This document shows, piece after piece, positions 14,775-58,037 of a stretch of DNA of 64,000 nt. The notes under the pieces are model-generated. The model made no database searches. It worked only from the letters and a program-made list of their open reading frames with translations, and had not been told where the DNA came from. Within the stretch, counting starts at the first letter, position 1, and each line of letters opens with the position of its first letter. The position numbers were made by a program, and so were the translations under genes. The stretch covers positions 434,001-498,000 of the IMG/VR virus record IMGVR_UViG_3300050122_000263; one strand, 5' to 3'.

Positions 14775-17700
14775 TCAATAGAACACCTTGAAGGCCCTAA
14801 GTAACTTGAAGCTGCCATTACAACGCATTGGTTCTGGTGATCTAGGTGGTGACTCTTCGCGCAGATACGGCATCTGAATGCAGATGCAGTTGAAGCGTTC
14901 TCCAGCCACTTTATCGGCATCCATAATCCAATCTGCCTCATCTAAGAAGATACCATAGGAAAGGAAGGCGGAGAATTGAACCTGTACCCACCGACGCTGT
15001 AGCGTTTCTCGATAGCGAAGCATATATTTGTCGTAGACTCTACGACGTTCGATTTCGATTTTCTCTAGTTCGTATTCATACTCCTCTTGTGTCATCGAGT
15101 TATTTGCTCTGTTAATTTTGATCAGCTCATTCCAATCTCGGGTCTTGACGCCGGCGCGGAAAGTAGCAGCTTCAAAGACTCTGCCTCCAGTCATAAGCAA
15201 CTCATTAAGTTGAATCCACTCCTCTTGATTATCCGTATTAAACAGGGGAAGCTCGGCAACCTGCTCCTCCGACAAAGGTACAGGTTGATGTAGATCTAAG
15301 GGGATGTCAACGAATCCCTCATCATAACCGATTAATTCTATCAGACCTGTGATCCTGATAGGGATCTCACGGATACCCAAGCGAGATTGTGGCAGATTAG
15401 GGATGCGGGTTAAATCTGGCTCGATTGTTTGATGAGCACTATCCTGTCTCACAATCACATGAGGGAAGTCCCGCCCCACTGTATCGTGATCGCCATAAGT
15501 TGTAGCTTGAATTTGAGCCAGGAGGTGTGGGTTTGCCATCTGACCAACTCCCATGATAAGCTCTGGGCCATTGCCTCGATAGTTGGTCCATGATGTTTCT
15601 TTGATATAGTCGCGAGCATCGGCATCTGGCTGCTCAAACCTGATAGCAGGCTCAGTTGGCAGAGCCGTGGGTATCAGTAACTGTCGAGCAGATATTTGCC
15701 GTGCGGTGGGTCTAACCTTCCAGCCATAATGCAGCTCTGGTAGCAGCTCGATCTGACAGTCTCGCAGCAAGAGACGACGTCCCTCTTTGGCGCGATACAT
15801 GGGATCATCTTCACCTAGATTGGCCCCAATAACTGGCTGTATTTGGATACCTGTTTGCTCGATGTAATCATCAAAGCCATTGCGAAAACGGCCGTCTAAT
15901 TTGAGTTGGTCTAGATCGAGCTCCTCTGTTCTGGGTGCCCCTCTGGGATGGAAGGCTTCCTTATCAGCTGCTCTAACACGGAGTGTGTCATATCTCTGAT
16001 CATTAAAGACGACATGGTAGTTGCCCTCATCACCCGGTAGACTCCAATACTGCTCCTGAGGAGCACGCCGTGTAGGTCGTTCTAGAGGACGTGGACGATC
16101 TGCTACTCTCACGCCAGCTGCTTCTAGCGTCTTGGAGATGAGAACAGGCTTACCTTTGGTTAACTCAAACTGCTCAAAAGATCCTCTATTACTTGTGATG
16201 AAGGAATAAGGCATAATCAGCTTAACAGAGAAGCCCCGATATAAAGCCTTAACCAGGCGGACAGCACGGATATTGTAGCGGATCAGGACAGCCTCTCTTT
16301 TACGGTAATACAGGGAAAAGAGAGGAGCACAACAGAGCCCATGATGGATATCATAGCCAACCTGAATGTTGGAGGTGTCAAAGTTCATCAGCACTTCTAA
16401 CGGAGTCTGGCAATCTGTGGCAATGATCTGTAGAACAAAGACCTGGTTGGGGCTAAGACGTCGAGTTAGGGTCAAAACCGACTTTCTAATGGCATAGTAG
16501 TATTCATCGGTTGGCATATATTGCTGCAGCCACTCCAGTAGCAGCTCATACATGACACTTCGGGCGTCGTGAGTTTTCCCATAGATGAAGAGATCAACAT
16601 CCGTCTTGTCAACAAAACGCTCATACAACCAGTCATCCATGACAATGGAGAAAAGGCCGCCACCCAATACATAACCAAGGGGTGGATGCTCTTCACCGGG
16701 TGCTGGTAGATGAAAGCCTTCACGAGCATGTGCTTCTTGACGCTCTAATAGCATTTCTTGTATGCGCCTTGTTAACCAGTCATTCATCTGCAGTAGTTGG
16801 GGGAAGACTTGAAGCAGCCGATCCGTAACTCGCTCTTTACTAGCGAGCGTCACAGTGGCGGGTGGTGGAACTCTAAATGAGCCAGCCGGAATGGCAGCAC
16901 AGGGCTCAGCGTCCATGTAATCTGGCAGAAGGGGTCTGCTGTCTCGTAATGGGTCTAATAAGAAGAGGTGCCTGTTGAAGCGGTTGATCCGCTCTGGCTT
17001 AGTGTAAGGGTAGGCATGGGGCATGAGAGCGTAGGCAAACTGTTCATTGACAGCAATCAACCGTTGATAGTAGTTGATAATCTCCTGTGTGAACGAGTCG
17101 CTAGCATACAGTGCGTCAGATAAGCGTCGTAGATATTGGGCTGTGGCTGCGGGTGCTTGCTGGAAAAGCTCAACCACTGTGTCAAAGGGTAGCAGGGTGC
17201 CTTCTGGCACTTGGTCGAGATATCGCCAGATAAGTGGCAGGAAGCGCGAACAAATATTCTCTGGCCGCAGTTGTGCTACCACAGCCTCTGGGAGTGTTCC
17301 TGAAGTTGTCGGAGCTCCTGGAGTTATGAAGCGCTGTCTGAAGGGTCCGAGGGCCCTGGGAGCTGTTTGTGCAAAAATTGCTAAACCCTCCAGAGGCTCT
17401 GTAACCGCTTCTTCTTTGCCTTTGCCTCCATCTGCAGCTTTGACTTCTGGCTGAACAGCTTGTGCCTGACACTTCAGCACTCTTACGGCGGCTAACAGGG
17501 CAAAGAAAACAGTTTCACTCACATTTTCATCAAGATACCCTCTACCAAAGAGCGCATATAGATTTCGGATAAAAGAGTCAAGATCACTAAGATGCCTAAA
17601 AACATCGGGACCGATTTCTTGCTCAGACAGGATGAAGCGGTAACGATCTGGATCTGTGATATTCTGCCTCTCGTTGAACAAGAACAGCGTTTCCAGCGCT

Positions 17701-17837
17701 TCACTATTAGCTATAGCTAAATCACGGGGCAGCAGGAAACTATTGGCGTCATTAGCTCCTATCTGCAGAGTCACATATTGAGGCGCTTGCATCGGTCTCC
17801 CTTTTGTTCTGAGCAAAACAATACCAATGTTAAGCAT
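14775..17837 (-). CDS. Large Pol-beta-superfamily nucleotidyltransferase-like protein, family member A, with possible BTB-like N-terminus
   Basis: YVLGGGLFSI...KTDVDLFIYG (GG + DxD), LQII, NFDTSNIQVGYD and KALYRGF; homologous to 22477 and 55212. Confidence 0.75.
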   Translation of the reverse strand: MLNIGIVLLRTKGRPMQAPQYVTLQIGANDANSFLLPRDLAIANSEALETLFLFNERQNITDPDRYRFILSEQEIGPDVFRHLSDLDSFIRNLYALFGRGYLDENVSETVFFALLAAVRVLKCQAQAVQPEVKAADGGKGKEEAVTEPLEGLAIFAQTAPRALGPFRQRFITPGAPTTSGTLPEAVVAQLRPENICSRFLPLIWRYLDQVPEGTLLPFDTVVELFQQAPAATAQYLRRLSDALYASDSFTQEIINYYQRLIAVNEQFAYALMPHAYPYTKPERINRFNRHLFLLDPLRDSRPLLPDYMDAEPCAAIPAGSFRVPPPATVTLASKERVTDRLLQVFPQLLQMNDWLTRRIQEMLLERQEAHAREGFHLPAPGEEHPPLGYVLGGGLFSIVMDDWLYERFVDKTDVDLFIYGKTHDARSVMYELLLEWLQQYMPTDEYYYAIRKSVLTLTRRLSPNQVFVLQIIATDCQTPLEVLMNFDTSNIQVGYDIHHGLCCAPLFSLYYRKREAVLIRYNIRAVRLVKALYRGFSVKLIMPYSFITSNRGSFEQFELTKGKPVLISKTLEAAGVRVADRPRPLERPTRRAPQEQYWSLPGDEGNYHVVFNDQRYDTLRVRAADKEAFHPRGAPRTEELDLDQLKLDGRFRNGFDDYIEQTGIQIQPVIGANLGEDDPMYRAKEGRRLLLRDCQIELLPELHYGWKVRPTARQISARQLLIPTALPTEPAIRFEQPDADARDYIKETSWTNYRGNGPELIMGVGQMANPHLLAQIQATTYGDHDTVGRDFPHVIVRQDSAHQTIEPDLTRIPNLPQSRLGIREIPIRITGLIELIGYDEGFVDIPLDLHQPVPLSEEQVAELPLFNTDNQEEWIQLNELLMTGGRVFEAATFRAGVKTRDWNELIKINRANNSMTQEEYEYELEKIEIERRRVYDKYMLRYRETLQRRWVQVQFSAFLSYGIFLDEADWIMDADKVAGERFNCICIQMPYLREESPPRSPEPMRCNGSFKLLRAFKVFY

Positions 17838-17879
17838 TTCTCAACATTGTTGTTCTGAGCTCAGACAATCTCAAGCGCG

Positions 17880-17903
17880 AAGATCATTGAGATGAATGAT
17901 CTT
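17880..17903. terminator. Hairpin downstream of 17949..18203
   Basis: aagatcatt-gagatg-aatgatctt. Confidence 0.6.
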
Positions 17904-17948
17904 TTTCTACACCCTAATCTTGAGGCTAGAGTCTCAAGGAGGGACTTT

Positions 17949-18203
17949 TTAACCTGAATAATTAGTTAATTCCCGCTGATAGCGTAGATGCCATATAGTT
18001 GTGGCAATTCCGATGAAACCACATACTACAATGAGAGGTAGCCTAAGCAGGAAGCGTCTACGAGTCAGCCTGTGTTCAATGTATTCTTGTATGGACTCAT
18101 TGAGTAGATAGAGGCCAATGCCTAGGATGAAGAGTGCTATCACCAGAGTGAGACTTGCCCCAGCAACCTCGAGGAATTTGTAGAGAGTCTTCAAAGGTAT
18201 CAT
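17949..18203 (-). CDS. Small two-TM protein, paralog of 20062..20322
   Basis: 84 aa; EYIEHRL...LLRLP...IG...WH..Q pattern shared with the paralog. Confidence 0.6.
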   Translation of the reverse strand: MIPLKTLYKFLEVAGASLTLVIALFILGIGLYLLNESIQEYIEHRLTRRRFLLRLPLIVVCGFIGIATTIWHLRYQRELTNYSG

Positions 18204-18356
18204 AACTACTGTGCTGTAGGTGGCTTTGCTGTGAACTAAACAGCATGATGGAATATCGATTTCTCCAGTGTGTTTCTATTCCATCAAGTTATCAACAGGG
18301 CTGTTAAGTAATAACAACAGCTTGGGTTGCAGATTCAAACTTCGCTCAAGAAAGTT

Positions 18357-18381
18357 AAAATATCTTGACATAAGGTGTTTT
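18357..18381. terminator. Imperfect hairpin downstream of the methyltransferase
   Basis: aaaatatctt-gacat-aaggtgtttt. Confidence 0.55.
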
Positions 18382-18387
18382 TATCAT

Positions 18388-19860
18388 TCATCTTACCTTC
18401 ACCGCCAAGTAGGGATATTTCCGTTGGAAGAGCAGATCAAACCTGTCTTTGATTGAGCTGGGTGTTAAGGGCTGAAACAGGTGATACCCAATAGCAACGC
18501 CCTCGCCCTTCTGCCAGATCCAAGCTGGATAGCAAGCTCTGGTGGTGGTCTCAATTCCAATCACTCCTGCATAATGAGCATTGGGTAAGTAGGCTCCAAT
18601 AAAGAGGTTAGCTACTTCTGTCAGCTGAACCGTAATATTGTCATGCAGATAGAGTATCATGCTGCCTCCTTCACGCAGAGCAGCCCAGCTCTTACGCAGA
18701 AGACAGAAAAGAAACTTCTCCAACCAAGCGTTAAGATTTGGATAAGCCACAGAGGATTGTGTGGGTGAGAAGCTGTATTTCTCCAGATTGAAACAAGGTG
18801 GGCAGGCCATAACCAAATCATATTTCTCTGTTAGGATCACTTTGTCCGACTCAAATGGCTGGTAGATGATCTGATAGTTTTGCTTCTGTCTGGCAAATGT
18901 CTCGATGATCTTGTCGTGGCCCAGTCCTAGGGCTATATTGGGGTCGAAACCATGGTAGATAACTCCAGCTGAGATGGCTCCAATCAGACGGTCACCCCAG
19001 CCAGCTGATGGATCAAGCACTTTCATTGTCTCGCCGCGTTTTACAGTCACCACATGGTTGATGACATCACAATGGGCAGGTGGCTGAAAGATATCGATCA
19101 AAGCTCTGGCAGCACTGGGATTGAAGATCTTGCACTCTCGTATAAAAGTGTAGAGTGCTTCTTTCAGATTGGCTGGTGTCAGATTCCATTCATTGCGAAT
19201 CAATATATCAAAGGCGCGATCCAGTATCTTGCGATCCTTCCATATAGTTAGGGGTGCTTGGCCTTTGCCAAACCTAGCTTGTAGCCTCACTTCCTCGGTG
19301 AAGAAGGAGTTGATACCATCATAAGCCGCATAATGATCCTTTTCGGTCGGCAGGTAGGAATGACACCCATCCTCAAAGGAGAGGAGGCAGCGCCTAACCT
19401 CGTCAGACATCATAACACCATGCAGAGGCAGCGGATTTGGGAGTAGCATGTCTGGAATGAGGTGGCTGTGAACATCACATAAGTTGTTGTACATAACAGT
19501 TGCAATCTTTTGATCACGATATCTGACAGTCAGAGGGAAACCCAGTCTCTGAATATCGCATAGTATATTCCACCGCCTGTTTGGGTCAGTTAGCGTACGC
19601 CAGTGATAGTCATAGTCTAAGGGAGTAATCCTAGCCTTTTGAACTATACGTTGGCTTGTATTATTATCATCCTGCTTGGCATTCTCGGGGCTGAGTTGAG
19701 GAGATTGTGGCTTCATCTGCTGTACTGGCTGGGTTGCCTGGCCAGGTTGCTTGAGCTGAACAGATAAGTTATTCGGCACGTGCACTGAAGTTGGCCCTTG
19801 TTTCCCCGAATGGGAAACAGGACGGTATGTCTTCATAACACCACGCTGCATCACTTGCAT
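18388..19860 (-). CDS. SAM-dependent amino (m4C/m6A)-type DNA methyltransferase with atypical catalytic motif
   Basis: Motif I VLDPSAGWGDRLIGA; motif IV reads YDLVMACPPCFNLEKY where the family has TSPPYF; IFNPSAA upstream. Confidence 0.8.
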   Translation of the reverse strand: MQVMQRGVMKTYRPVSHSGKQGPTSVHVPNNLSVQLKQPGQATQPVQQMKPQSPQLSPENAKQDDNNTSQRIVQKARITPLDYDYHWRTLTDPNRRWNILCDIQRLGFPLTVRYRDQKIATVMYNNLCDVHSHLIPDMLLPNPLPLHGVMMSDEVRRCLLSFEDGCHSYLPTEKDHYAAYDGINSFFTEEVRLQARFGKGQAPLTIWKDRKILDRAFDILIRNEWNLTPANLKEALYTFIRECKIFNPSAARALIDIFQPPAHCDVINHVVTVKRGETMKVLDPSAGWGDRLIGAISAGVIYHGFDPNIALGLGHDKIIETFARQKQNYQIIYQPFESDKVILTEKYDLVMACPPCFNLEKYSFSPTQSSVAYPNLNAWLEKFLFCLLRKSWAALREGGSMILYLHDNITVQLTEVANLFIGAYLPNAHYAGVIGIETTTRACYPAWIWQKGEGVAIGYHLFQPLTPSSIKDRFDLLFQRKYPYLAVKVR

Positions 19861-20057: not shown

Positions 20058-20061
20058 TTTA

Positions 20062-20479: not shown

Positions 20480-22024
20480 ATGGAGTTTCAGATGCAGGAG
20501 CCTAGCTCAAAACGAGCGATTGAACCTGAGAAGGAGTGCCAGATAGATGTCCTATTAAATGAGTATAAGTCTGATGTAACTTGTTCCACCCTTCGCTGGC
20601 TCAAGGAACACGGCATTACTCAGAAGCAAGTGAAGGATTGGTTAGAAGAGAGACGTCTCGTATTTCCATGGAGCACTCGGTACGATTCTGTACGACTCTA
20701 CTACAACCGTCTGATCCAGTACTTTCCCCTTATGCTAGTCAGAGTCAGGAAGCAGAGTGATATTCAATGGGCTCTGCGCTTCTGTCATCATTATAAGGCC
20801 CCGTTTGCTATCCGCAGTGGAGCTCACAGTACAGCCGGCTTCTCCGCTTCCACAGGCGTTATCATTGATTTGATGAAGTATGATAGGGTGAAGATCCTAT
20901 CTCATGAGAAGGGGCTAGTCAGAGTGGCTGCTGGAGCTCGAATTGGTGAAGTGGCTAAGATACTGGCTCAATCTGGGTTAGCTCTGGTGGCCGGTACATG
21001 TCAAAACACAGGTGTGGGTGGCCTGACTTTGGGCGGAGGTCTTGGCTTCTTAACTCGCAAATATGGGCTAACCATTGACAGTGTGGTAGAGCTCAATATT
21101 ATCCTGGCTAATGGTAGGCGCGTGACAGCCAACAAAGAGAGTCATCCTCAGCTGTTCTGGGCTTGTTGTGGGGCAGGCAACGGCAACTTCGGTGTTGTCA
21201 CTAGCTTTGTCTTCCAGACTTATCGAATCAAGGAAGTTGTTTTGTTCCAACTTTGGTTTGAGAAGAAGTACTTGAAGCCTGTATTTGAGTTTTGGCAGGG
21301 CTGGTGCTCCACAACAGATCCGAGTTTGACCACCGAACTCAAGATACGCAATGATGCTAGTAAACCTGGTCACATCTTGATTGAGGGGCAAGGCGATCCC
21401 TCCCCTTGTCGTAGGAAAGAATGTCCCAGCCCTTGCGACCCAACCAAGCATGTGGAGCATCTCATCACTCCTTTCTTCCAATGGGCGCCTAAGGTCAAGA
21501 TCTGGCTGACCAGTTTTGCTGATGCTGTTCGTCACTTCTCAACTCCGATTCCAGATATGTTCTTCAAGTATAACACGTCATTCGTTTACCGTCCTCTTCC
21601 GCGGAAGGCCATTAATATTATCGACAAGGCCTTCTCAGAAACGCCACCACAAATCTACATCTCATTCCACTCATTTGGAGGGCGTGTAGCTGAGATTGGT
21701 GAGTCAGAGACCGCTTTCCGTTGGCGCAAGTCGCTGTATTGGTTGTACATCCGCTCTTCTTGGAAAGATCCCCAGTTACAGGAGCAGCTACAAGCGGTTA
21801 ATGAGCGCATCTATCTACAACTCTGGCCCTTCCTAACTTCGGAGTTCAAAGTGCCTCGACTGTATGCGAACTTTAACGCCTTTAATGTTGGGCCTAAATA
21901 TGGGGAGGCTTATTGGGGTAAGAATTATAAAGCTCTACGCGTGATCAAGGCCTGCTATGATCCGGACAATTTCTTCACTTCGCCCCAACCGATCCAGCCT
22001 GCTAAGGTGATTACTGTGGAGTAA
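20480..22024 (+). CDS. FAD-linked oxidase, berberine-bridge-enzyme/AA7-like (FAD_binding_4 + BBE domain)
   Basis: AIRSGAHS, GTCQNTGVGGLTLGGGLG, GAGNGNFGVVTSF, YANF and YWGKNYKALRVIKACYDPDNFF. Confidence 0.92.
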   Translation: MEFQMQEPSSKRAIEPEKECQIDVLLNEYKSDVTCSTLRWLKEHGITQKQVKDWLEERRLVFPWSTRYDSVRLYYNRLIQYFPLMLVRVRKQSDIQWALRFCHHYKAPFAIRSGAHSTAGFSASTGVIIDLMKYDRVKILSHEKGLVRVAAGARIGEVAKILAQSGLALVAGTCQNTGVGGLTLGGGLGFLTRKYGLTIDSVVELNIILANGRRVTANKESHPQLFWACCGAGNGNFGVVTSFVFQTYRIKEVVLFQLWFEKKYLKPVFEFWQGWCSTTDPSLTTELKIRNDASKPGHILIEGQGDPSPCRRKECPSPCDPTKHVEHLITPFFQWAPKVKIWLTSFADAVRHFSTPIPDMFFKYNTSFVYRPLPRKAINIIDKAFSETPPQIYISFHSFGGRVAEIGESETAFRWRKSLYWLYIRSSWKDPQLQEQLQAVNERIYLQLWPFLTSEFKVPRLYANFNAFNVGPKYGEAYWGKNYKALRVIKACYDPDNFFTSPQPIQPAKVITVE

Positions 22025-22476: not shown

Positions 22477-25083
22477 TTGGAAATCGCTATGGAACCACCA
22501 CCGATCCGCCTAGTGCTACCGAGCTTTGTGCTGATCATTCCTGCAGACAAAGCCAATCGCTCTAGGGTGCTACGTGGAGTATATGCTTTCAATCAAGAAC
22601 TCAGGAGAGAAGGGGATATCTACCAGCAGTTCACTGTACCGTTAGATGAGTTACCTGAATCTGTGCTTACCAGTGTTGAGCAGCAACAAGCGTTAACCAG
22701 CTATGTGGGGTATCTCTTCGATCTAGCTCCTTTACCAGAGCAACATAATACTACAGCGCTACTTGCAGCCTTATCCGTAGGACGTCTGCTGGAGTGCCAA
22801 GAACTTATGTGTCAAAGGTTGAGTGAGATAGCTCGACTCTACTTCGGCCGTGCTGGCTTCGATCAATTGCCTGATGCGGAATTTATGATCTGGCTTTTTG
22901 GCCTCGCTCCACAGCAGGCAGCCACGTATCTGAAACAGTTCTCCAACCATATCTACGAACAGGATAGTTTTAACCGAGAGATTCTGTTGTATTGGCAAAC
23001 GTTGATCCAGGCTAACGAGCAATATGCTTACGCGTTGCAACCACACGGCTACCCATTTACTCGCAGAGAGCGGATTGATCGTCTAGCACCTAGTCTTTTT
23101 CTGTTGGATCCCTTACGCAACTCTCCACAGGTAGAGGACTATATGGGGGCTGATGTGGTGGCATTTATCGAACCAGATGCTTACAAGAATGCTCCGCCTC
23201 CTGTTGAGTTAGTTACAAAAGAATTAGTTGTTGAGCGTATCAGTCAAACCTTCCCGCTTATTATCCGACTCAATGAGAGATTAAGGGATATTGTCGTTCA
23301 GCGCTTCCCAGCTCTTGATGCTGGCTTTATCTTCGGGGGAGAGTTGTTCACAATTTTGCTTGATAAGTGGCTTTTCACCTATTTCAATGATAAACCAACC
23401 ATCACATTGAGTATATATGGACCAACTCAAGCTGTTAGAGCCCAAATTTCGGAACTGTTATTTGACGAGCTATCGGCCACATGGGAGGTCAACAAATTGC
23501 ATCAAGGTCGCCTGACAGCTATAATGTTCAATGGACACCACTATATTGTTACGTTACTCAATGATGATCGAGCTCACACTCCTCTAGAAGCCCTAATGGA
23601 TATGCCCCTCTCTAGCACACAAGTTGGTTACGACGTGCATAGAGGTTTGGTCTGCTCAGCCGCATTCTCTTTGTATTATCGAAAGCGTCAGGATGTTATT
23701 CTGAGTTACGGCGTCCCAGAACGCAGTGCAATCAAAACTCTGTATCGCGGCTTCTCCCTGCGTGTGATCGCTCCCTATGCTTACGTACTAGTGCAGGTTT
23801 CGCGATACAAGAGGAGACTGGAAGCATACATTCAAGAAACTCCTTTAATGCGTATCTCCAATGTTACCCTCATCAAAGGGCAACCGCTCTTGTTGATTGC
23901 TGATCCTCAAGCACCTCGTCTAGGGCGGGCTGACGAACCAAATGCCGTTGATCCACGCGCATTTACACATGCTGATCGTGCTATAGAGGCAAAACTACTG
24001 GGACAATGGGGACAGTATTATTTCCTGCCTTATAAACAGGGCGGTAATATCAGCATAGAATTTAACGGCGCCATGTCAGTTGCTGACATAAAACAGATCG
24101 CTTTACAAGCTGCCCTAGATAGAGGGGATTACGAGCTCGGATCAAATATCGTAATTGGCTCCAACGTCTTTCAGACAACACCTCTGATTAAGGTTTTTTG
24201 GGGTTACAGACATCTCTTCGGAATACGCGCCGCCGACCTCACGAGGGAACATATTATTCCCTCGTTTTTCATGACAGGGGCTCAGCTCAAACTCTTCGTC
24301 AGAAACTGTCGTATAAGCCAGGCAGATCAATACAATTTTGCCTGGCAGCACAATAGTCCCAATACGCTGATCCGGAAAGCGACGAGAGTTTTTGTCGAAC
24401 GTGATCCACGACAGGTGGAGAATGGGCCGCCACCTGTGCCTGCCATGCCAGCAGCACCCGAACTTAAACCGTTTAGACAGCGTAAACTAGTTGCCGTACA
24501 AACACAAGAGAATCCTGGGCCTCTCGATCATCCAGAGATGTTACGTATGGAGCGCTACGAATATCCAGTCCGGTTGACAGGCATCATTCAGCTAACTGGA
24601 GATCCCACTGCGCCTGAGGATCTACATGAACCACTGATGCTGACTGCAGAGGAAGAAAGAAATATGATAACTCTTGATCTTACTCAGCCTCTGCAGATGC
24701 GACAGGTGGAAGACTACTTCTTTCTGTCTAATACAGAGTATGTTAGACAGATGCTTGCGTACCGGGCAATGTTCGATGAAATCAGAGAACTCAGTAATGA
24801 TGCGTTTAGAATGAATCAAGAAGATGTTATTCGACGAGGAGATGCTCTGGACTTTACGGAGCAGATCCGGGGTATGCAAGCTGGTCTGCCTCGCTACATC
24901 CGCATTATATTTGATGTCCACATCGCACAATGGATGTTCTTGGATGAAGCCCATTGGTTGATGAGCTTCCAAGATATGTTAGCCTCCCAGTTGAACTGTG
25001 TTTTGTTTCGTCGATTCCAGCGCCGGAAAGGAGTTGATATGGTTCATTATTTCATCACACAGGGCTTCAAGCAGCTACCTTAA
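22477..25083 (+). CDS. Nucleotidyltransferase-like family member B, catalytically degenerate
   Basis: Homologous to 14775 and 55212 (YPFTRRERIDRLAPSLFLLDPL, QVGYD, LYRGF, FLDEAHW), but DVD is replaced by TIT and NFD by DMP. Confidence 0.75.
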   Translation: MEIAMEPPPIRLVLPSFVLIIPADKANRSRVLRGVYAFNQELRREGDIYQQFTVPLDELPESVLTSVEQQQALTSYVGYLFDLAPLPEQHNTTALLAALSVGRLLECQELMCQRLSEIARLYFGRAGFDQLPDAEFMIWLFGLAPQQAATYLKQFSNHIYEQDSFNREILLYWQTLIQANEQYAYALQPHGYPFTRRERIDRLAPSLFLLDPLRNSPQVEDYMGADVVAFIEPDAYKNAPPPVELVTKELVVERISQTFPLIIRLNERLRDIVVQRFPALDAGFIFGGELFTILLDKWLFTYFNDKPTITLSIYGPTQAVRAQISELLFDELSATWEVNKLHQGRLTAIMFNGHHYIVTLLNDDRAHTPLEALMDMPLSSTQVGYDVHRGLVCSAAFSLYYRKRQDVILSYGVPERSAIKTLYRGFSLRVIAPYAYVLVQVSRYKRRLEAYIQETPLMRISNVTLIKGQPLLLIADPQAPRLGRADEPNAVDPRAFTHADRAIEAKLLGQWGQYYFLPYKQGGNISIEFNGAMSVADIKQIALQAALDRGDYELGSNIVIGSNVFQTTPLIKVFWGYRHLFGIRAADLTREHIIPSFFMTGAQLKLFVRNCRISQADQYNFAWQHNSPNTLIRKATRVFVERDPRQVENGPPPVPAMPAAPELKPFRQRKLVAVQTQENPGPLDHPEMLRMERYEYPVRLTGIIQLTGDPTAPEDLHEPLMLTAEEERNMITLDLTQPLQMRQVEDYFFLSNTEYVRQMLAYRAMFDEIRELSNDAFRMNQEDVIRRGDALDFTEQIRGMQAGLPRYIRIIFDVHIAQWMFLDEAHWLMSFQDMLASQLNCVLFRRFQRRKGVDMVHYFITQGFKQLP

Positions 25084-35141: not shown

Positions 35142-36284
35142 ATGTGGCAAGCTGTTCAAACTCCAACTCGTGAAGGCCTGGCCGTAATGACCGTTGTACA
35201 GATTAAGGAGATTGCTAAGCAGTACCAAATACAAGCCCCAAGTAAGCTGAAGAAAGCGGAGCTCATTCAATATATCTTGGGTAAGCTGCAGGAGCGAAAC
35301 ACAGGCACAGTTCGGGGTGAGAACCTCCCTGTGCGCTATGACGAGCTTGTGCCAGTTTACATGGATTTGTCAGAGTATCAGAAATACGCCTCAGAAGAAC
35401 AACCGGCATGGCTCATCCATCTACATCTCCATGGTTACGCAACCGTACCAATAGCTGGTCTAGATGTGGCCTGGGCTCAGAGCAAGTTCTTTGACTTCCT
35501 AGAGTTGTGTTCTGCCAACTTCAAACGCCAGGATCCAACTACCTGGACCAGACATAATCTGCCACCCTTGTTACATGGCATCTTGAAGCATTATTGTGGT
35601 CACACAGAATTACAATGGGTGGTGAGGGAGTTATGTACCCCCATCTTCGCCAAAATCTGGAAGGTGGCGGAGCGTGATCTTCTCAGCTCCTTCGATGGTA
35701 TCAGCTTCCGTCCCCCTGATCTTAAACAAGCTGTTTGGAAGTCATGGCTACATAATGATCAGCATCGCAATGAGCACGGTTTCTGTTGTGTGCAAGGAGT
35801 AGCCACCCTCATGGAATGCGGCGCGCAGGATGGTGGTTTGGTTGTGTTAGAGGGGTCCCATCACGTGTTTGAAGAATATATGGCCAGACACCCTTGCGAC
35901 AACCTCAACTTTACCAAGGCGGATCTCAATGATCCAGCCCTACAAGGCCGTAGACGCTTGAAGATCTGTGCTCCAGCTGGCAGCATTCTACTCTGGAGAT
36001 CAGACATGATGCATGAGTCTAGCTGTCCTCAAGGCCAAATACCCAGGATGGGCCTCTATATGTGCCAACAACCAAGGCGAGGAGCAGACCAAATCACGCT
36101 CAATAAGAGGATAGAAGCTTATCAGAAAGGCAGAGTCAGCTCTCATTCCTGTTATGGGCCTTGGTTCAGCATCAATCCTGAGCATCCTCGCACATGGGGC
36201 TCGGAGGTGAACACTCCCACAGTCATTGAGATTGCAATGGTGCAACCTGGCTCACTGAGAGCTCGCCTGATCGGCTATGATTAA
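35142..36284 (+). CDS. Fe(II)/2-oxoglutarate dioxygenase (PhyH-like) with N-terminal Rho-N/SAP-like helical domain
   Basis: WLHNDQ (HxD), CVQG, GGLVVLEGSH, AGSILLWRSDMMHES and R in PRMGLY; N-terminal MTVVQIKEIAKQYQI...KLKKAELIQYI. Confidence 0.82.
   Translation: MWQAVQTPTREGLAVMTVVQIKEIAKQYQIQAPSKLKKAELIQYILGKLQERNTGTVRGENLPVRYDELVPVYMDLSEYQKYASEEQPAWLIHLHLHGYATVPIAGLDVAWAQSKFFDFLELCSANFKRQDPTTWTRHNLPPLLHGILKHYCGHTELQWVVRELCTPIFAKIWKVAERDLLSSFDGISFRPPDLKQAVWKSWLHNDQHRNEHGFCCVQGVATLMECGAQDGGLVVLEGSHHVFEEYMARHPCDNLNFTKADLNDPALQGRRRLKICAPAGSILLWRSDMMHESSCPQGQIPRMGLYMCQQPRRGADQITLNKRIEAYQKGRVSSHSCYGPWFSINPEHPRTWGSEVNTPTVIEIAMVQPGSLRARLIGYD
36225..36284 (+). repeat. 60-bp direct repeat, copy 1 (3' end of the dioxygenase)
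   Basis: 52/60 identical to 37132-37191. Confidence 0.9.
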
Positions 36285-52695: not shown

Positions 52696-52699
52696 AGCG

Positions 52700-53269: not shown

Positions 53270-53425
53270 CGTTTTGCAACATACGCCGTGTGGGAGGTAA
53301 TTCAGATTTTGTAACCTTCCTTTCTGGTTTAAGGCACTGATCGGGTTAGTCCAGGAGTCCTGACAGATTTAATCCATTATCCACAGTCAAGCCAATATTA
53401 AGGCTGGGTTGTGATATAACACCTG

Positions 53426-53447
53426 TTATCTCTAACGTTAGAGATAA
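53426..53447. terminator. Perfect 22-bp palindrome downstream of 53462..53983
   Basis: ttatctctaacgttagagataa. Confidence 0.7.
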
Positions 53448-53461
53448 GGGTTTATATTGTC

Positions 53462-53983: not shown

Positions 53984-54072
53984 TTATCCTATCCTCTTTA
54001 CTTTTAATGGATAAGATGGAAGAAAAAGCTTGCAAGCTTTTTAACAGTGATTCACCCCCGAACTTGATAGAC

Positions 54073-54399
54073 TTAACGGAACTGGGTGGGGGTGAAAGCG
54101 CCCTGGAAAGTATTGGCTGGTTGGAAGGGTTGAGGTTGGAAGGGTTGGAAGGGTTGAGGTTGGAAGGGTTGGAAGGTCTGAGTTGGAAGAGTTGCAGTTG
54201 GAAGGGCTGGGGTTGGAAGGGTTGCTGTTCTTCTTGCCACTATTCTTCGAAGAAGGCCTTCTTTCCCTTCAATCATGGACATAAGTGATTGACCAGGCTG
54301 GGGGATAAATTGCTGTGCTGGCTGAGGTTGCAGAGCCGCAACTTGTCTCTGTGCCTCGGCAAATCCGGCTTGATAACCTTCATCATAAGCTCCTTCCAT
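54073..54399 (-). CDS. Small Gln/Pro/Phe-rich protein
   Basis: 108 aa; AYDEGYQAG at the N-terminus, QPF repeats at the C-terminus. Confidence 0.55.
   Translation of the reverse strand: MEGAYDEGYQAGFAEAQRQVAALQPQPAQQFIPQPGQSLMSMIEGKEGLLRRIVARRTATLPTPALPTATLPTQTFQPFQPQPFQPFQPQPFQPANTFQGAFTPTQFR
54121..54176 (-). repeat. 24-bp tandem repeat (two copies plus a partial) encoding QPFQPFQP
   Basis: ttggaagggttgaggttggaaggg at 54121 and 54145. Confidence 0.85.
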
Positions 54400-54615
54400 G
54401 TTTACAGACTCGGTAAATTAAATTTCTAACAACTTGCATCATTTCGAGTTATTCATTTCTCTCTAACTTCTCCCTTAATCATGGGCTTATTTCCAAGAAA
54501 TTGCAGAGAAGTTCTGCAAACAAATTCTCGCTTGATAGGAGACCAAATACTCAAGCAAATTTCCCACATTATGTAAAATGATTGTCACAACCTCAATCAA
54601 AGTTAAGGCCAAACA

Positions 54616-55119
54616 ATGACATGTGTTGGTAAAGCTCTAACTCTCGGTATCGGCTCTCTATTTGCAGCGCTTGGTATAACATTAATTGTGGTTAGTGTGG
54701 TTCTCTTCCATAACAGTGAGATACCCTGTCTAGTTGAGACCATGATTGGCACAAGCATTACAGGTGATGAGAGCGGATGTTCCGTCTATGGGACTGTGAC
54801 TGTTGGACTTCAGAACAATCAAAGTGTTACCATCGAGCATCTGGTCTGTAACTACAAGTTCAAATGTCCCACTATCGTGGCTGATGGCTGTGAAGGAGGC
54901 TACTTTCAGATCGGTAAGAATGCATATTGCTATATGAGCTTGGGCAAACTGATGGTTCAGCGCTCTAGAGGCGATCTCTCGGCTGGCTTGGTTTTCCTGA
55001 TCGTGATGGGCTCTGTGCTTATTGCAACGGGTATTGCTGTCAGCACTACTCTCTGGTGTATAAACTACCGAGGGCGCCGGGCTCACGGTGTTGCTGAGCA
55101 TGAGGTCCTGATTAATTAA
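54616..55119 (+). CDS. Two-TM protein with Cys-rich loop, family member 3
   Basis: CLVETMIGT...CSVYGTVTVGL...C...C...CEGGYF.IG..AYCY..LG. Confidence 0.75.
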   Translation: MTCVGKALTLGIGSLFAALGITLIVVSVVLFHNSEIPCLVETMIGTSITGDESGCSVYGTVTVGLQNNQSVTIEHLVCNYKFKCPTIVADGCEGGYFQIGKNAYCYMSLGKLMVQRSRGDLSAGLVFLIVMGSVLIATGIAVSTTLWCINYRGRRAHGVAEHEVLIN

Positions 55120-55211
55120 TGATGTTAAAACTAGCCCATAAGTACTGTGAAATATATGCCATGATTGACATATAGTTTTTTTCAAATATCTCAAGCTCTT
55201 CACTAGTATCC

Positions 55212-58037
55212 CTAGTGAAGGACGCGGAAAGCTCGCAGAATACGCAGCCGGCCATCGTTAGCACCGACACCATGCTCATCCTCTTCATCACGGTTAGGAG
55301 CCTCGGGCCGGGAGACCTGACAGAGACAGTTGAATTCGCCCTTATAGAGCTCCTCGTCAAGCAGGGTCCAGTCAGCCTCATCTAGGATAATTGTGTGAGA
55401 CATGCGAGCCGGACCCTCATAGCGGAATAGGGGCCGTCTAGCAGCACCAGCTTCAACAGCTCGTCGTAGAGGTTCAGCGATCTGATTGCGGAGGACGCGT
55501 CGCTCAGCACGTCTTTTCTTGATGTGCTTCTTCATATTAGGCAGACCACGGTAAGATTCAATGGTATCGCTGAGCCTCTGAATCTTGTGCTGTACGCCTG
55601 GGAAGAGAAGTTCCACTTCATGAGCAGCGTGCTCATAGGGTGAGTGTTCCATGATGGTGGTGGCTAAATTGGAAGTGGTCACAGGCTCCCTGTCCAGGAT
55701 GAAGGGTAAGTGGAGATCGCGTGGATAATTACCACTAAAGTGAAAGAAGCCCGTTAAGGTAACGGCAATCTCTAACTTGTCGGCAGAGCGCTTCTCGAAG
55801 GGTGGATCGGGAAGCTCAGCGTCGATGGTCTCGATTCTATTTGAACCAACCACATTAAAGGCGACGACACCGACGCGCTGAATTTGACAGCCCCACAGCA
55901 TGAAACGGTATATACTATGCATGCTGTGCCAAGGGATGGCGCTTAAGGTGGGACCTCGCTCGATGTAGTAATCAAAGCCATTGCGAAAGCGACCATCTAT
56001 TTTGACATCTTCCAACAAACAGACCAGACCCAGATCCTTACGATTGAGGCGCAGTGCTTGGTTATCTTTCTCTATCACTTTTATCACCCTTTTGGAGGGG
56101 TTTTCACCATAAACATCAGTAACCATGTAATAACCCGGATCGCCAAGTAGATGGGCTGAGCCTAGTCTGTCTGACCTATGCGCGTCTGCATTCGGTACTT
56201 CAACATCTCTTGCGCGATAGCTTATAACTTCTCTCTTAAAAACTGCAGCCACACCTTTCTTCAAAATGAGATTGCTGTAGAAATCGCCCTTTGGCTTGGT
56301 GATGGTTGAATAGGGCATAATTAACTTGATGACAAAGCCACGGTAGATTGTCTTAATCAGACGGGCAGCTCGGATATTGTAGCGTACCAGAACCGCTTCG
56401 CGCCGCCGATAATAGAGTGCGAAGAGAGGAGTGCAACAAAGTCCGCGATACAGGTCATAGCCGACTTGAATGTTGCTGGTGTCAAAGTTCATGAGTACTT
56501 CTAGCGGATTCAAGCAATCTGTGTTGATAACCTGTAATGCAAAAGCTCCCCGCTTAGTAGGCTGACTCAGAGTTATCACACTTCGATTGACAAAGTAGAA
56601 ATAGTCGCGAGACGGCAGGTTGATTGTTAGCCAACCTAGTAGAATCTCCAATATCTGTCGGCGCGCCTCTGTAGTTGGGCCGTAAATAAAGAGATCGACA
56701 TCTGTCTTATCGGCAAAACGGTCATATAACCAGTCGTTCAGGATGATGGAGAAGAGACCGCCACCCAGCACATAGCCGGCATCTCTGTTGGGAAACTGTT
56801 GCAGAATAAGTTGTTCCAGTTGCTGATTCATAGTTAGCACCTGTGGAAAGATGTTGATGAGGCGTTCTGCAATAACTACCTGCCCACTGATGTTAAAGCT
56901 TGGTGGAGGGGGTACTTTGAAGACTTTGATACCGTATTTGCGCTGCCAATGACTCAGCTCACGTGTAGCCGCATAATATGCTGTTCTTTCTTCTACCCTT
57001 TGTGCTTCTTCAGCTTCCTGTTTCTCGCGTTCCTCAGGTGTGTTTGCTGGAACTCTTTGAGGAGGTTTCAGTAGATGAGCTGGCTGCTCTGGTATCGGCG
57101 GTCGAGGTGGAACAGTAAATTCTCCCTCCAGGCTAAGGCGTACAATGTCACTGGGATTGAGAGCAGCTACCTGTGCTCTCATATAGTCCGGTACTATGGG
57201 GCTTGTGATTTTGAGTGGATCGAGCAGGAAGAGATGGGGCGCTAAGCGATCTAAGCGTTCTGCCCGCGTGTACGGATAGGCATGAGGCATTAAACAGTAG
57301 GCAAATTGTGGCTCTAGTTCAATCAGATCTCTGATGTATTTAATTACCTCCATAGTGAAGGCATCTTGCTCATACAGCAGATCAACCACTTTGCGTAGAT
57401 ATTGGGTTGTCATTGTCGCATCTACACGCAGCAGGTAATACATGCGCTCATGCAGAGTGCCTAGTGGCAGGCGGGCAAAGTAGAGTCTTGTTAGTTGAGT
57501 GATTTGGGGACAGAAACCTGGCTCGCATTGGAGCTCAGCCACCAGCACGATCAACAATTCTAATGCTTCCAGAGAAAGCTTACTCTCATCAGGTAGCCCT
57601 AGTTCACCTGATCGTGCTAGATAATCCACCAGCTCCTGGTGAACAGCCGGGTCGTTAGTGACTGCTGCTACTCTGTCTGGTGCCAGATTGTAGACATATT
57701 GGGCTGGGGCTGCCTGGTTGCGCTGGTTGAACTCGATCAGACGTTCTAGCACTGGGAATGCCTTGATGAATGTGGGGGATGGAGTGAAACTAGCCGCACC
57801 CACAAAGAGGTGTAGAGGTGGACCCTGAACTTGTGGGGCTTCAGCTACAATGATGGTTGGCTGCAGCTGTGGCAGAGTGCCGGCAGGAGCGATCTGTCGC
57901 TGCATGGCTGGTTTACTAAGATTGCAGAAAGATTTCTGCAATATCTCATTTGTGTGGGGGTTGTACCTTGTTTCAGGTATTGCTGAGTGGAGTTTGAGTT
58001 GTTGTGATTTGCGAGTTATATGCGATGGTTTAGGCAA
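55212..58037 (-). CDS. Nucleotidyltransferase-like family member C (intact motifs); start may be MQRQIAP
   Basis: GYVLGGGLFSII...DKTDVDLFIYG, LQVI, NFDTSNIQVGYD, KTIYRGF, FRNGFDYYIE, ILDEADW. Confidence 0.75.
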   Translation of the reverse strand: MPKPSHITRKSQQLKLHSAIPETRYNPHTNEILQKSFCNLSKPAMQRQIAPAGTLPQLQPTIIVAEAPQVQGPPLHLFVGAASFTPSPTFIKAFPVLERLIEFNQRNQAAPAQYVYNLAPDRVAAVTNDPAVHQELVDYLARSGELGLPDESKLSLEALELLIVLVAELQCEPGFCPQITQLTRLYFARLPLGTLHERMYYLLRVDATMTTQYLRKVVDLLYEQDAFTMEVIKYIRDLIELEPQFAYCLMPHAYPYTRAERLDRLAPHLFLLDPLKITSPIVPDYMRAQVAALNPSDIVRLSLEGEFTVPPRPPIPEQPAHLLKPPQRVPANTPEEREKQEAEEAQRVEERTAYYAATRELSHWQRKYGIKVFKVPPPPSFNISGQVVIAERLINIFPQVLTMNQQLEQLILQQFPNRDAGYVLGGGLFSIILNDWLYDRFADKTDVDLFIYGPTTEARRQILEILLGWLTINLPSRDYFYFVNRSVITLSQPTKRGAFALQVINTDCLNPLEVLMNFDTSNIQVGYDLYRGLCCTPLFALYYRRREAVLVRYNIRAARLIKTIYRGFVIKLIMPYSTITKPKGDFYSNLILKKGVAAVFKREVISYRARDVEVPNADAHRSDRLGSAHLLGDPGYYMVTDVYGENPSKRVIKVIEKDNQALRLNRKDLGLVCLLEDVKIDGRFRNGFDYYIERGPTLSAIPWHSMHSIYRFMLWGCQIQRVGVVAFNVVGSNRIETIDAELPDPPFEKRSADKLEIAVTLTGFFHFSGNYPRDLHLPFILDREPVTTSNLATTIMEHSPYEHAAHEVELLFPGVQHKIQRLSDTIESYRGLPNMKKHIKKRRAERRVLRNQIAEPLRRAVEAGAARRPLFRYEGPARMSHTIILDEADWTLLDEELYKGEFNCLCQVSRPEAPNRDEEDEHGVGANDGRLRILRAFRVLH

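What the first reader, a model, noticed from the sequence alone, without database searches (positions are those of the whole stretch)
14775..58037. Family of three large Pol-beta-like nucleotidyltransferases, including a pseudo-enzyme
Seen: 14775 (1020 aa), 22477 (868 aa) and 55212 (941 aa) share their whole architecture: an N-terminal BTB-like segment, HxYPxTxxERxxR...FLLDPL, the NTase core, LTG...DLHxP and LDEAxW. Two keep GGGLFSI...TDVDLFIYG and NFD. In 22477 these read GGELFTI...PTITLSIYG and DMP, so the metal-binding aspartates are lost while the frame stays intact. Known: hG[GS]x(9-13)Dh[DE]h defines this superfamily (CCA-adding enzymes, poly(A) polymerases, cGAS/CD-NTases, AMPylases). 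Inferred: active and dead paralogs may form an enzyme/regulator or decoy set, for RNA tailing, protein AMPylation or nucleotide signalling.
Basis: partly seen in the sequence, partly recalled or inferred. Interest (0 to 1): 0.72.

Follow-up and report, generated by a model that had tools for sequence, protein, structure and literature searches.

The report
Giant-virus BTB-nucleotidyltransferase family, mostly dead copies
An uncultured giant virus from peat carries eleven copies of a large protein that joins a BTB protein-binding domain to a CCA-enzyme-like nucleotidyltransferase domain. Only three copies keep the catalytic residues; the other eight lost them once, long ago, yet selection has kept them intact.

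Summary
The window belongs to a 582 kb giant-virus (NCLDV) contig from peat that holds 11 full-length paralogs, not three.

Predicted structures of 14775 and 22477 show the same layout: an N-terminal BTB(-BACK-like) domain, a nucleotidyltransferase (NTase) domain, a variable linker and an unassigned C-terminal domain. The best NTase matches are class II CCA/A-adding enzymes (Z 10.7 and 10.3). BTB matches reach Z 6-8.

A profile search found 113 distant relatives that nearly all keep an 11-residue signature (G393, D413, D415, F417, Q470, F486, D487, Q492, R527, K530, G535). Three paralogs in this genome keep 11/11: 14775, 55212 and one outside the window. 22477 keeps 4/11.

The eight degenerate copies form one well-supported clade. 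Their synonymous sites are saturated, dN/dS is at most about 0.16, and 22477 has no stop codon where about 44 are expected. So they are selected pseudo-enzymes, not decaying genes.

The architecture was already described computationally for Pandoravirus "cluster 7". Protein-language-model features also point to the Gad2-type NTase family. What is new is the large, old pseudo-enzyme clade with a remodelled pocket.

The substrate and function remain unknown. The contig encodes no tRNA, which weakens the viral tRNA-maturation idea.

The parts
14775..17837 (-). Paralog with an intact NTase signature (1020 aa). Layout by residue: BTB about 18-125 plus helices 195-215, split by a disordered insert at 126-192; BACK-like helices and a conserved linker, 216-330; NTase, 331-548; variable low-confidence region, 549-822; C-terminal domain, 823-1020.
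   Evidence: AF2 model. VIA-align. Keeps 11/11 signature residues.
17193..17786 (-). BTB domain of 14775 (residues 18-215, including the disordered insert at 126-192).
   Evidence: VIA-align Z 7-8 to the BTB domains 8p2n, 6xmx and 2vpk over model residues 18-210. Atlas features point to BTB families. Coordinates checked.
16194..16847 (-). NTase domain of 14775 (residues 331-548).
   Evidence: VIA-align gives 3wfo_A Z 10.7, 3h37_A 9.5 and 6jyj_A 8.6. Foldseek against PDB. pLDDT is about 85-94.
16578..16676 (-). Motif A of 14775: GYVLGGGLFSIVMDDWLYERFVDKTDVDLFIYG (G392/G393, D413, D415, F417).
   Evidence: Model strands E388-392 and E414-419 flank helices 394-411, the classic strand-GG-helix-strand-DxD arrangement. 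Conservation in 113 distant relatives.
16377..16385 (-). NFD (residues 485-487) of 14775, the motif-B-like FD.
   Evidence: F486 and D487 are each 99% conserved in distant relatives.
14778..15371 (-). C-terminal domain of 14775 (residues 823-1020): strand ITGLIELIG, a long helical hairpin, and a small sheet carrying LDEADW...FNC.
   Evidence: D966 and N983 are invariant in 14 sequences. No fold or family was assigned.
22489..25083 (+). Pseudo-enzyme paralog (864 aa from ATG 22489; the mechanical ORF starts at TTG 22477). It has the same four-part architecture.
   Evidence: AF2 model: pLDDT 73.7, pTM 0.76. VIA-align: 3wfo_A Z 10.3 and BTB Z 6-7. Keeps 4/11 signature residues. No stop codon against about 44 expected.
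23323..23421 (+). Degenerate motif A of 22477: GFIFGGELFTILLDKWLFTYFNDKPTITLSIYG (D413->T, D415->T, F417->S).
23599..23607 (+). DMP in 22477, in place of NFD.
55212..57905 (-). Second paralog in the window with an intact signature (897 aa from ATG 57905; the mechanical ORF reaches TTG 58037). It carries a Pro/Glu-rich insert before the NTase domain.
   Evidence: Keeps 11/11 signature residues.
56679..56777 (-). Motif A of 55212: GYVLGGGLFSIILNDWLYDRFADKTDVDLFIYG.
56481..56489 (-). NFD of 55212.

Best explanation
**Shown.** The three genes belong to an 11-copy, lineage-specific expansion in an uncultured peat giant virus. The multidomain protein has four parts: a BTB(-BACK-like) domain, a class-II-like (CCA/poly(A)-polymerase-head-like, Gad2-type) nucleotidyltransferase domain, a variable linker, and a conserved C-terminal domain of unknown fold.

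The intact catalytic signature is ancestral: GG-x19-DxD, a conserved Gln at 470, FD in place of motif B's RRD, and R527/K530. Three copies keep it (14775, 55212 and genome 36378). It was lost once in the ancestor of a clade that then grew to eight copies, including 22477. That clade has stayed under purifying selection with the whole architecture preserved.

**Inferred.**
- The three intact copies are active enzymes that transfer a nucleotide from an NTP to a hydroxyl acceptor. By fold, the acceptor is most likely an RNA 3' end.
- The BTB domain makes them oligomeric and/or docks them on a host partner such as a cullin-3 ligase.
- The eight dead copies no longer catalyse and probably no longer bind NTP, because R527 is replaced in all eight and K530 and R534 in the five-member subclade.
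- They most likely act as non-catalytic partners, either as BTB-mediated hetero-oligomers with the active copies or as binding adaptors or decoys towards the same host target.
For: **Family size and motif states.**

**Ancestral signature.** Of 113 distant relatives from a search of 1.84 billion representatives, 89-100% keep each of the 11 signature residues. The close metagenomic homologs P0004, P0005, P0006 and P0014 keep all 11.

**Fold.** Both the intact 14775 and the dead 22477 match class II CCA/A-adding enzymes (Z 10.7 and 10.3) and BTB domains (Z 6-8).

**Same architecture elsewhere.** BFVD hits to BTB proteins of Fadolivirus and Pandoravirus reach E 3e-12 to 3e-10 over 640-1100 alignment columns. 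An Atlas cluster pairs BTB_2 with Gad2.

**Single loss.** The eight dead copies form one clade (support 95/94). A dead homolog from another contig, P0015, is their sister (84/95).

**Purifying selection.**
- For the closest dead pair, dN is 0.37 against a saturated dS of 2.3.
- In 22477, 4-fold degenerate sites match its paralogs at about the random level, while 31-36% of amino acids are kept.
- Its frame has no stop codon against about 44 expected; the other five frames have 35-61.

**Remodelled, not eroded, pocket.** The five-member subclade has fixed E415, R470, Q486, R/Q487 and E/K527.
Against: - No enzymology, expression or interaction data exist. No RNA run holding the gene was listed.
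- No sequence-level hit to any Pfam, NCBIfam or PDB NTase. The fold call rests on AF2 models built from shallow alignments of 14-16 sequences.
- The canonical third carboxylate is absent (Gln at 470) and the GG-DxD spacing is atypical, so even the 'intact' copies might bind rather than catalyse.
- Where the Cul3-contact phi-x-(D/E) motif is expected, the sequence reads F-N-E in 14775 but F-N-Q or another non-acidic residue in all other genome copies. Cullin docking is therefore not supported by sequence.
- Hetero-oligomerisation could not be modelled.
Confidence: 0.6

Rival explanations
1. **All eleven are non-catalytic BTB substrate adaptors.** The NTase-like domain serves only as a recognition module that hands host proteins to a cullin-3 ligase, as poxvirus BTB-kelch proteins do. 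On this view the DxD in three copies is an ancestral leftover.
For: - BTB and BTB-BACK matches include the vaccinia A55-Cul3 complex 6i2m (Z 6.3 and 5.5).
- Structural relatives of the same NTase domain are annotated with F-box, KCTD-type BTB or ankyrin domains, and one sequence relative has a RING finger. Several of these are ubiquitin-ligase modules.
- Most copies here lack catalytic residues.
Against: - The 11-residue signature is kept 11/11 in the three intact copies and in four close homologs, across more than one substitution per site. It is kept at 89-100% per position in 113 distant relatives. That level of conservation indicates selection on the active site.
- No acidic residue occupies the expected Cul3-contact position in most copies.
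Confidence: 0.15
2. **The intact copies are viral CCA-adding or tRNA-repair enzymes.** This is the role proposed for Pandoravirus cluster 7.
For: - The best structural matches are class II CC-, A- and CCA-adding enzymes.
- The proposal is made in bioRxiv 10.1101/2023.12.02.569716.
Against: - ARAGORN finds no tRNA gene in the 582 kb contig.
- Motif B (RRD) is replaced by NFD.
- By inspection, no EDxxR base-recognition motif is present.
- No recognisable tRNA-binding body or tail domain is present.
- PF01743 does not match these proteins.
- A separate small ORF elsewhere in the genome has the canonical class II head motif.
Confidence: 0.08
3. **The 'dead' clade has a new activity or ligand.** The remodelled charged pocket (E415, R470, R487, E527 in five copies) would bind or process a different, probably anionic, ligand. 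On this view these copies are not merely scaffolds.
For: The replacement residues are themselves conserved within the subclade across saturated synonymous divergence. The fold is retained with high model confidence.
Against: - The three-member subclade containing 22477 has a different replacement set (T415, P487), so there is no common new pocket.
- A Glu/Arg network may simply be a salt bridge that fills the former metal site.
Confidence: 0.12
4. **22477 and its kin are decaying pseudogenes or annotation artefacts.**
For: Loss of all catalytic carboxylates. No Pfam hit.
Against: - Open frames of 864-905 codons persist in all eight copies.
- 22477 has no stop codon against about 44 expected.
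- dN is far below the saturated dS.
- Non-catalytic motifs are conserved and the AF2 model is confident.
Confidence: 0.02

Closest known systems
Pandoravirus 'cluster 7' BTB-nucleotidyltransferase proteins (e.g. A0A2U7UAG2; bioRxiv 10.1101/2023.12.02.569716)
   Same: - About 900 aa, with an N-terminal BTB(-BACK), a class-II-like NTase and a third C-terminal globular region.
- The same best PDB matches: 3wfr/3wfo at Z about 10.5, BTB 2vkp, and A55 6i2m.
- Motif A is present. A conserved Gln stands where the third carboxylate is expected, xFD replaces RRD, and basic residues are conserved downstream.
- The family is multi-copy in each genome.
- BFVD Foldseek matches Pandoravirus proteins at E 1.5e-11 to 3e-10.
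   Different: - Only 12-16% identity in structural alignments. The host virus is unrelated in composition (46.6% GC) and has a major capsid protein gene.
- The preprint reports the catalytic motifs conserved across cluster 7. Here 8 of 11 copies have lost them.
- No tRNA genes occur here.
Gad2 (Gabija anti-defence 2) family, Pfam PF26128, and phage NTases of phrog_1614
   Same: - Language-model features put the 14775 core next to PF26128 clusters (score 0.94, 186 of 256 features shared).
- An Atlas structure cluster with BTB_2 plus Gad2 is the best shape match.
- Distant sequence relatives of the family hit phrog_1614 'nucleotidyltransferase' at E about 1e-8.
   Different: - Gad2 is a phage protein of about 400 aa without BTB, acting against a bacterial system. 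Its own mechanism is unknown.
- The PF26128 model is not in the local Pfam copy, so membership could not be scored.
- tblastn against phage genomes found nothing.
Class II CCA-adding / A-adding enzymes and bacterial poly(A) polymerase (PF01743 head domain)
   Same: - Best solved-structure matches: 3wfo Z 10.7, 3h37 9.5, 9kma 8.9, 3aql 8.7.
- A strand-GG-helix-strand-DxD arrangement.
- A D-h-[ST] motif where RRDFTIN lies.
   Different: - No HMM match.
- GG-DxD spacing is 19, not 9-13.
- RRD is replaced by NFD.
- No EDxxR motif.
- No tRNA-binding body or tail domain.
Pseudo-NTases paired with or derived from active NTases (NF45/NF90 DZF domains, MiD51)
   Same: The NTase fold is retained without catalytic carboxylates and used for protein-protein assembly. 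NF90/NF45 appear among the Foldseek hits.
   Different: Those proteins still bind nucleotides. Here the conserved basic pocket residues are also largely replaced, and no heterodimer has been shown.
Poxvirus BTB-(BACK)-kelch proteins such as vaccinia A55
   Same: A viral N-terminal BTB-BACK-like module (6i2m Z 6.3 and 5.5), found in multi-copy families in large DNA viruses.
   Different: The C-terminal partner domain is an NTase rather than kelch. The acidic Cul3-contact residue is not conserved.

Membership tests
Pol-beta-like nucleotidyltransferase fold superfamily | Alpha/beta NTase core fold | tested here: met
   AF2 models of 14775 and 22477 have core pLDDT of about 85-95. VIA-align gives Z 10.7 and 10.3 to 3wfo_A. 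Foldseek gives probability 1.0 to CCA enzymes, TENT5 and NF90. This is a prediction, not an experimental structure.
Pol-beta-like nucleotidyltransferase fold superfamily | hG[GS] followed by Dh[DE]h on the next strand | tested here: met
   Met in 14775, 55212 and genome 36378 (LGGG...DVDLF). Not met in 22477 or the seven other dead copies.
Pol-beta-like nucleotidyltransferase fold superfamily | Spacing x(9-13) between G[GS] and DxD | tested here: not met
   19 residues separate G393 from D413. The whole wider family shares the long helix pair.
Pol-beta-like nucleotidyltransferase fold superfamily | Third catalytic carboxylate on a neighbouring strand | tested here: inconclusive
   The conserved residue on the strand at 465-473 is Q470, which is 95% Gln in distant relatives. 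The Pandoravirus preprint places its conserved Gln at the third-carboxylate site. No 3D superposition was available here.
Class II CCA-adding enzyme / poly(A) polymerase (PF01743) | Match to the PolyA_pol head HMM | tested here: not met
   No Pfam hit at E<=1 for the three proteins. A six-frame PF01743 search of the genome hits only an unrelated 360-aa ORF.
Class II CCA-adding enzyme / poly(A) polymerase (PF01743) | Motif B (RRD) and motif D (EDxxR) | tested here: not met
   NFD replaces RRD. No EDxxR is seen in residues 500-548 by inspection of the alignment.
Class II CCA-adding enzyme / poly(A) polymerase (PF01743) | A tRNA substrate available (viral tRNAs) | tested here: not met
   ARAGORN finds no tRNA genes in the 582 kb contig. 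Host tRNAs remain possible substrates.
Pandoravirus cluster-7-type BTB-NTase proteins | BTB(-BACK) N-terminus | tested here: met
   BTB matches at Z 6-8. A55 BTB-BACK at Z 6.3 and 5.5. The BTB HMM PF00651 itself does not match.
Pandoravirus cluster-7-type BTB-NTase proteins | Class-II-like NTase with motif A, a conserved Gln, xFD, and downstream basic residues | tested here: met
   Met in the three intact copies. Not met in the eight dead copies.
Pandoravirus cluster-7-type BTB-NTase proteins | Direct similarity to Pandoravirus members | tested here: met
   BFVD Foldseek matches P. inopinatum and P. salinus proteins at E 1.5e-11 to 3.3e-10 over 637-1102 alignment columns. The similarity is structural only.
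Pandoravirus cluster-7-type BTB-NTase proteins | Third C-terminal globular domain | tested here: inconclusive
   A conserved, moderately confident C-terminal domain exists. Its homology to the Pandoravirus C-terminal region was not tested separately.
Gad2 family (PF26128) | Match to the family HMM | not testable with these tools
   PF26128 is absent from the local Pfam copy. Only Atlas feature and shape similarity are available, plus a transitive link to phrog_1614.
Gad2 family (PF26128) | Anti-Gabija activity | not testable with these tools
   Gabija is a bacterial system. The host here is presumably a protist.
BTB-Cul3 substrate adaptors | phi-x-(D/E) Cul3-contact motif | tested here: inconclusive
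   At the position expected from the S-x-x-[LF]-x-x-[LM]-F pattern, the sequence reads F-N-E in 14775 but F-N-Q, F-I-Q, F-N-L, F-N-R or F-N-A in the others. The register was judged by eye, without superposition.

The most novel reading that the evidence does not exclude
The virus would run an enzyme/pseudo-enzyme system. The eight dead copies, with their conserved charge-swapped pockets, would be specialised regulatory or targeting subunits. They would hetero-oligomerise through BTB with the three active Gad2-like NTases, or compete with them for a host target. That would diversify an anti-host or counter-defence nucleotidyl-transfer activity, a eukaryotic-virus counterpart of phage Gad2.
Probability: 0.2. 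Interest if true: 0.7.

Novelty: new variant of a known kind. Interest (0 to 1): 0.5.

Why it matters
BTB-NTase proteins are among the large multi-copy families of unknown function in giant viruses. Their NTase domain appears to be the same kind as phage Gad2, whose mechanism is also unknown.

This genome offers a natural contrast set within one virus: three copies with every signature residue, and eight selected copies lacking them in two different remodelled states. That makes clear experiments possible. One can ask which residues matter, whether the dead copies bind the active ones or the same host partner, and what the acceptor is.

The result also shows that annotating such paralogs uniformly as "nucleotidyltransferase" would be wrong for most of them.

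Tried and rejected
**Searches that found nothing**
- Pfam (E<=1), NCBIfam and PHROGs on the three proteins gave no meaningful hit.
- PDB sequence searches with the three-member profile and with a 76-member wide profile gave nothing, or one spurious hit.
- tblastn against 50,697 phage records with 14775 and with a short distant relative found no match.
- Cluster look-up of ten distant relatives returned no names or organisms.
- PolB homologs are all unnamed metagenomic proteins at 50% identity or less over most of the query, so the virus lineage could not be named.
- The IMG/VR scan found the family only in a twin record of the same virus.
- The record holding homolog P0005 is not searchable.

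**Tests that could not be run or gave no signal**
- PF26128 is not in the local Pfam copy.
- A pN/pS test from population data failed. The virus is in at least six peat runs, but the contigs show no variants in 22477.
- No RNA run was listed, so there is no transcription evidence.
- Hetero-oligomer modelling was not attempted. The tool is offered only for bacteria, archaea and their viruses.

**Ideas rejected**
- A standalone C-terminal domain. P0026, P0038 and P0048 are contig-end fragments of full-length homologs.
- C-terminal domain identity. Atlas features score 0.84 or less and VIA-align gives only generic helical-hairpin matches.
- The viral tRNA-maturation role was weakened, because the contig has no tRNA genes.
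Full report
**1. What is there**

The three ORFs exist as stated and translate to the quoted sequences. They align over their whole length at 30-39% identity, with every quoted motif in register.

The mechanical ORFs of two of them start at TTG. The first ATGs give 864 aa (22489-25083, +) and 897 aa (55212-57905, -). 14775-17837 (-) is 1020 aa.

The window is bases 434001-498000 of a 582,007-base virus record with 46.6% GC. The record encodes an NCLDV-type major capsid protein and a family B DNA polymerase. The polymerase's nearest relatives are unnamed metagenomic proteins at 50% identity or less over most of its length. The same sequence occurs in at least six peat-metagenome runs without variants and in an IMG/VR twin record.

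**2. The family is eleven, not three**

A six-frame search and a phmmer/hmmsearch pass over all ORFs of the genome find 11 full-length paralogs of 864-1020 aa. They sit at genome positions of about 36, 43, 50, 398, 449, 456, 489, 539, 569, 572 and 574 kb. The last three form a same-strand tandem array.

Only three keep GG...TD[VI]DLFIYG and NFD: window 14775, window 55212 and genome 36378. The other eight, including window 22477, have lost them.

**3. Fold**

No Pfam, NCBIfam or PDB sequence match exists. AlphaFold2 models were built from the family alignments.

| Model | Mean pLDDT | pTM | Core pLDDT |
|---|---|---|---|
| 14775 | 65 | 0.69 | 85-95 (residues 20-125 and 190-550) |
| 22477 | 73.7 | 0.76 | about 90 |

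The structural matches agree between the two models:
- Foldseek against PDB returns only NTase-fold proteins at the top. These are class II CC-, A- and CCA-adding enzymes, TENT5/FAM46, NF90/NF45 and poly(A) polymerase, at E from 4e-4 and probability 1.0.
- The independent VIA-align scan of 48,161 chains gives 3wfo_A at Z 10.7 (14775) and 10.3 (22477). Next come 3h37, 9kma, 3aql, 4wby and TENT5B.
- Many BTB domains match the N-terminus at Z 6-8.
- The vaccinia A55 BTB-BACK/Cul3 complex matches at Z 6.3 and 5.5.

In the 14775 model, strand 388-392 ends in GG, helices 394-411 follow, and strand 414-419 carries D413-x-D415. That is the classic NTase arrangement.

The architecture by residue of 14775 is:
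- BTB, about 18-125 plus helices 195-215. In 14775 it is split by a disordered insert at 126-192.
- BACK-like helices and a conserved extended linker (HxYPxT..ER..FLLDPL..DYM), 216-330.
- NTase, 331-548.
- A variable, low-confidence region, 549-822.
- A conserved C-terminal domain, 823-1020. It carries ITG..., a long helical hairpin and LDEAxW...FNC, and its fold could not be assigned.

**4. The intact state is ancestral and strongly conserved**

A profile of the family was scored against 1.84 billion representative proteins and found 131 hits. Thirteen are family members: ten are products of this genome, and P0026, P0038 and P0048 are contig-end fragments. Five are close full-length-type homologs from other metagenomic contigs (P0004, P0005, P0014, P0015, P0016); a sixth, P0006, came from the first homolog search. 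The remaining 113 are distant relatives that match only the NTase core.

Aligned to the core, these 113 give an 11-residue signature in 14775 numbering:

| Residue | Share of the 113 relatives that keep it |
|---|---|
| G393 | 100% |
| D413 | 96% |
| D415 | 99% |
| F417 | 93% |
| Q470 | 95% |
| F486 | 99% |
| D487 | 99% |
| Q492 | 89% |
| R527 | 99% |
| K530 | 99% |
| G535 | 100% |

The three intact paralogs and P0004, P0005, P0006 and P0014 keep 11 of 11. 22477 keeps 4 of 11 (G393, Q492, K530, G535).

The sequence after NFD (D-h-[ST]-x-h-Q, then a strand ending in D) resembles RRDFTINA of class II enzymes. The D of NFD is therefore more likely the motif B equivalent, which reads the ribose, than a metal ligand. 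The Pandoravirus preprint reaches the same assignment.

**5. One loss, then expansion under selection**

A maximum-likelihood tree of the 11 paralogs plus five homologs puts the eight dead copies in one starred clade (95/94). A dead homolog from another contig, P0015, is their sister (84/95). The intact copies lie outside. End branches are about one substitution per site.

Evidence for purifying selection on the dead copies:
- For the closest dead pair, dN is 0.37 and dS is 2.3 and saturated, so omega is at most about 0.16.
- In 22477, 4-fold degenerate sites match its paralogs at 0.20-0.39, against 0.25-0.29 expected by chance. Meanwhile 31-36% of amino acids are conserved over about 800 positions.
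- Its frame has no stop codon against about 44 expected. The other five frames carry 35-61.

Neutral decay is therefore excluded.

The lost pocket is not random either:
- The five-member subclade has fixed E415, R470, Q486, R/Q487 and E/K527. This is a charge-swapped constellation that could close the former metal site with salt bridges.
- The three-member subclade with 22477 has T415 and P487 and keeps K/R530 and R534.
- The basic residue R527, 99% conserved in the superfamily, is replaced in all eight. K530 and R534 are replaced in the five-member subclade. NTP binding is therefore unlikely there.

**6. What it is closest to**

BFVD Foldseek gives its best hits to BTB/POZ proteins of Fadolivirus, Faunusvirus and Hyperionvirus, and to several Pandoravirus proteins. 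E-values run from 3e-12 to 3e-8 over 370-1100 alignment columns.

AlphaFold DB clusters give eukaryotic and giant-virus proteins annotated as "Poly A polymerase head", "Nucleotidyltransferase", KCTD-type BTB, F-box or ankyrin.

The ESM Atlas places the core next to clusters carrying Pfam PF26128 (Gad2), at score 0.94 with 186 of 256 features shared. Its best shape match is a BTB_2 plus Gad2 cluster. PF26128 is missing from the local Pfam copy, so this stays a lead. As a transitive sequence link, distant relatives hit phrog_1614 "nucleotidyltransferase" at about 1e-8.

Gad2 is a phage anti-Gabija protein predicted to be an NTase, and its mechanism is unknown.

A preprint (bioRxiv 10.1101/2023.12.02.569716) describes Pandoravirus "cluster 7". 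It comprises 23 proteins of about 900 aa with these features:
- BTB(-BACK), a class II NTase and a possible third domain.
- The same PDB matches: 3wfr Z 10.5, 2vkp and 6i2m.
- Motif A conserved in all members.
- A conserved Gln at the third-carboxylate site.
- DFD in place of RRD.

So the architecture is already known. The new element is the large, old, selected pseudo-enzyme clade.

**7. Function**

What is shown is the architecture, the ancestry of the signature, a single loss, and purifying selection.

What is inferred is as follows. The intact copies are active nucleotidyl-transferases, by fold probably acting on an RNA 3' end. BTB oligomerises them or docks them to a host partner. The dead copies are non-catalytic partners, adaptors or decoys.

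The viral tRNA-maturation idea is weakened here:
- ARAGORN finds no tRNA gene in the contig.
- No EDxxR motif or tRNA-binding body is apparent.
- A separate 360-aa ORF at genome 62858-63940 carries the canonical class II head motif.

A cullin-3 adaptor role is possible but unsupported. The BTB HMM does not match. The acidic residue of the expected phi-x-(D/E) contact is present only in 14775.

No expression data could be found.

**8. Verdict**

The family is a divergent variant of a computationally described giant-virus family. Interest is moderate.

Noticed in passing
window 2256-3794 (-) and 4052-5590 (-): Two adjacent 512-aa ORFs are paralogs (28% identity, E 1e-25) with repeated Cys/His-containing segments. 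Neither has a Pfam match.
   Followed up: partly
window 5882-7633 (+), 58177-60819 (+), 61071-63140 (+): Three collagen-triple-helix repeat proteins. One carries a Peptidase_S74 intramolecular-chaperone domain and one a BclA-like C-terminal domain. They are probably fibre or surface proteins of the virion.
   Followed up: no
window 20480-22024 (+): An FAD-binding, berberine-bridge-type oxidase (PF01565 plus PF08031) lies between two family members.
   Followed up: no
window 35142-36284 (+) and 8928-9788 (+): One ORF has a Rho_N/HeH (SAP-like) N-terminus fused to a PhyH-type dioxygenase. The other is a DXD-motif glycosyltransferase.
   Followed up: no
genome G000:C1:62858-63940 (+), outside the window: A 360-aa ORF carries a canonical class II NTase head motif (GGYLRDLIAG..DIDVV, then DFSVNLLAF) and a weak PF01743 match (16.9 bits). 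It is a separate, conventional-looking NTase in the same virus.
   Followed up: partly
whole genome G000 (582 kb): ARAGORN finds no tRNA gene. The 11 family members cluster towards the two ends of the contig, with a same-strand tandem trio at 568.9-577.1 kb.
   Followed up: partly
window 17262-17462 (-), residues 126-192 of 14775; window about 56800-57000 (-), in 55212: Copy-specific disordered inserts. 14775 has an Ala/Glu/Gly/Lys-rich loop inside its BTB domain. 55212 has a Pro/Glu-rich stretch (PRPPIPEQP...EEREKQEAEEAQR) before its NTase domain.
   Followed up: no
protein P0001 (675 aa) on a 13.3 kb contig: A shorter protein is 100% identical to residues 230-570 of 14775 and comes from another assembly. 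It is probably a truncated gene call or a contig-end fragment of the same virus.
   Followed up: no
window 22477-25083, in runs X1-X7: The virus recurs in at least six peat-metagenome runs from different samples or studies. The assembled contigs show no sequence differences over this gene. One short piece (window 23011-23055), matching with 6 other letters, probably comes from a paralog.
   Followed up: partly
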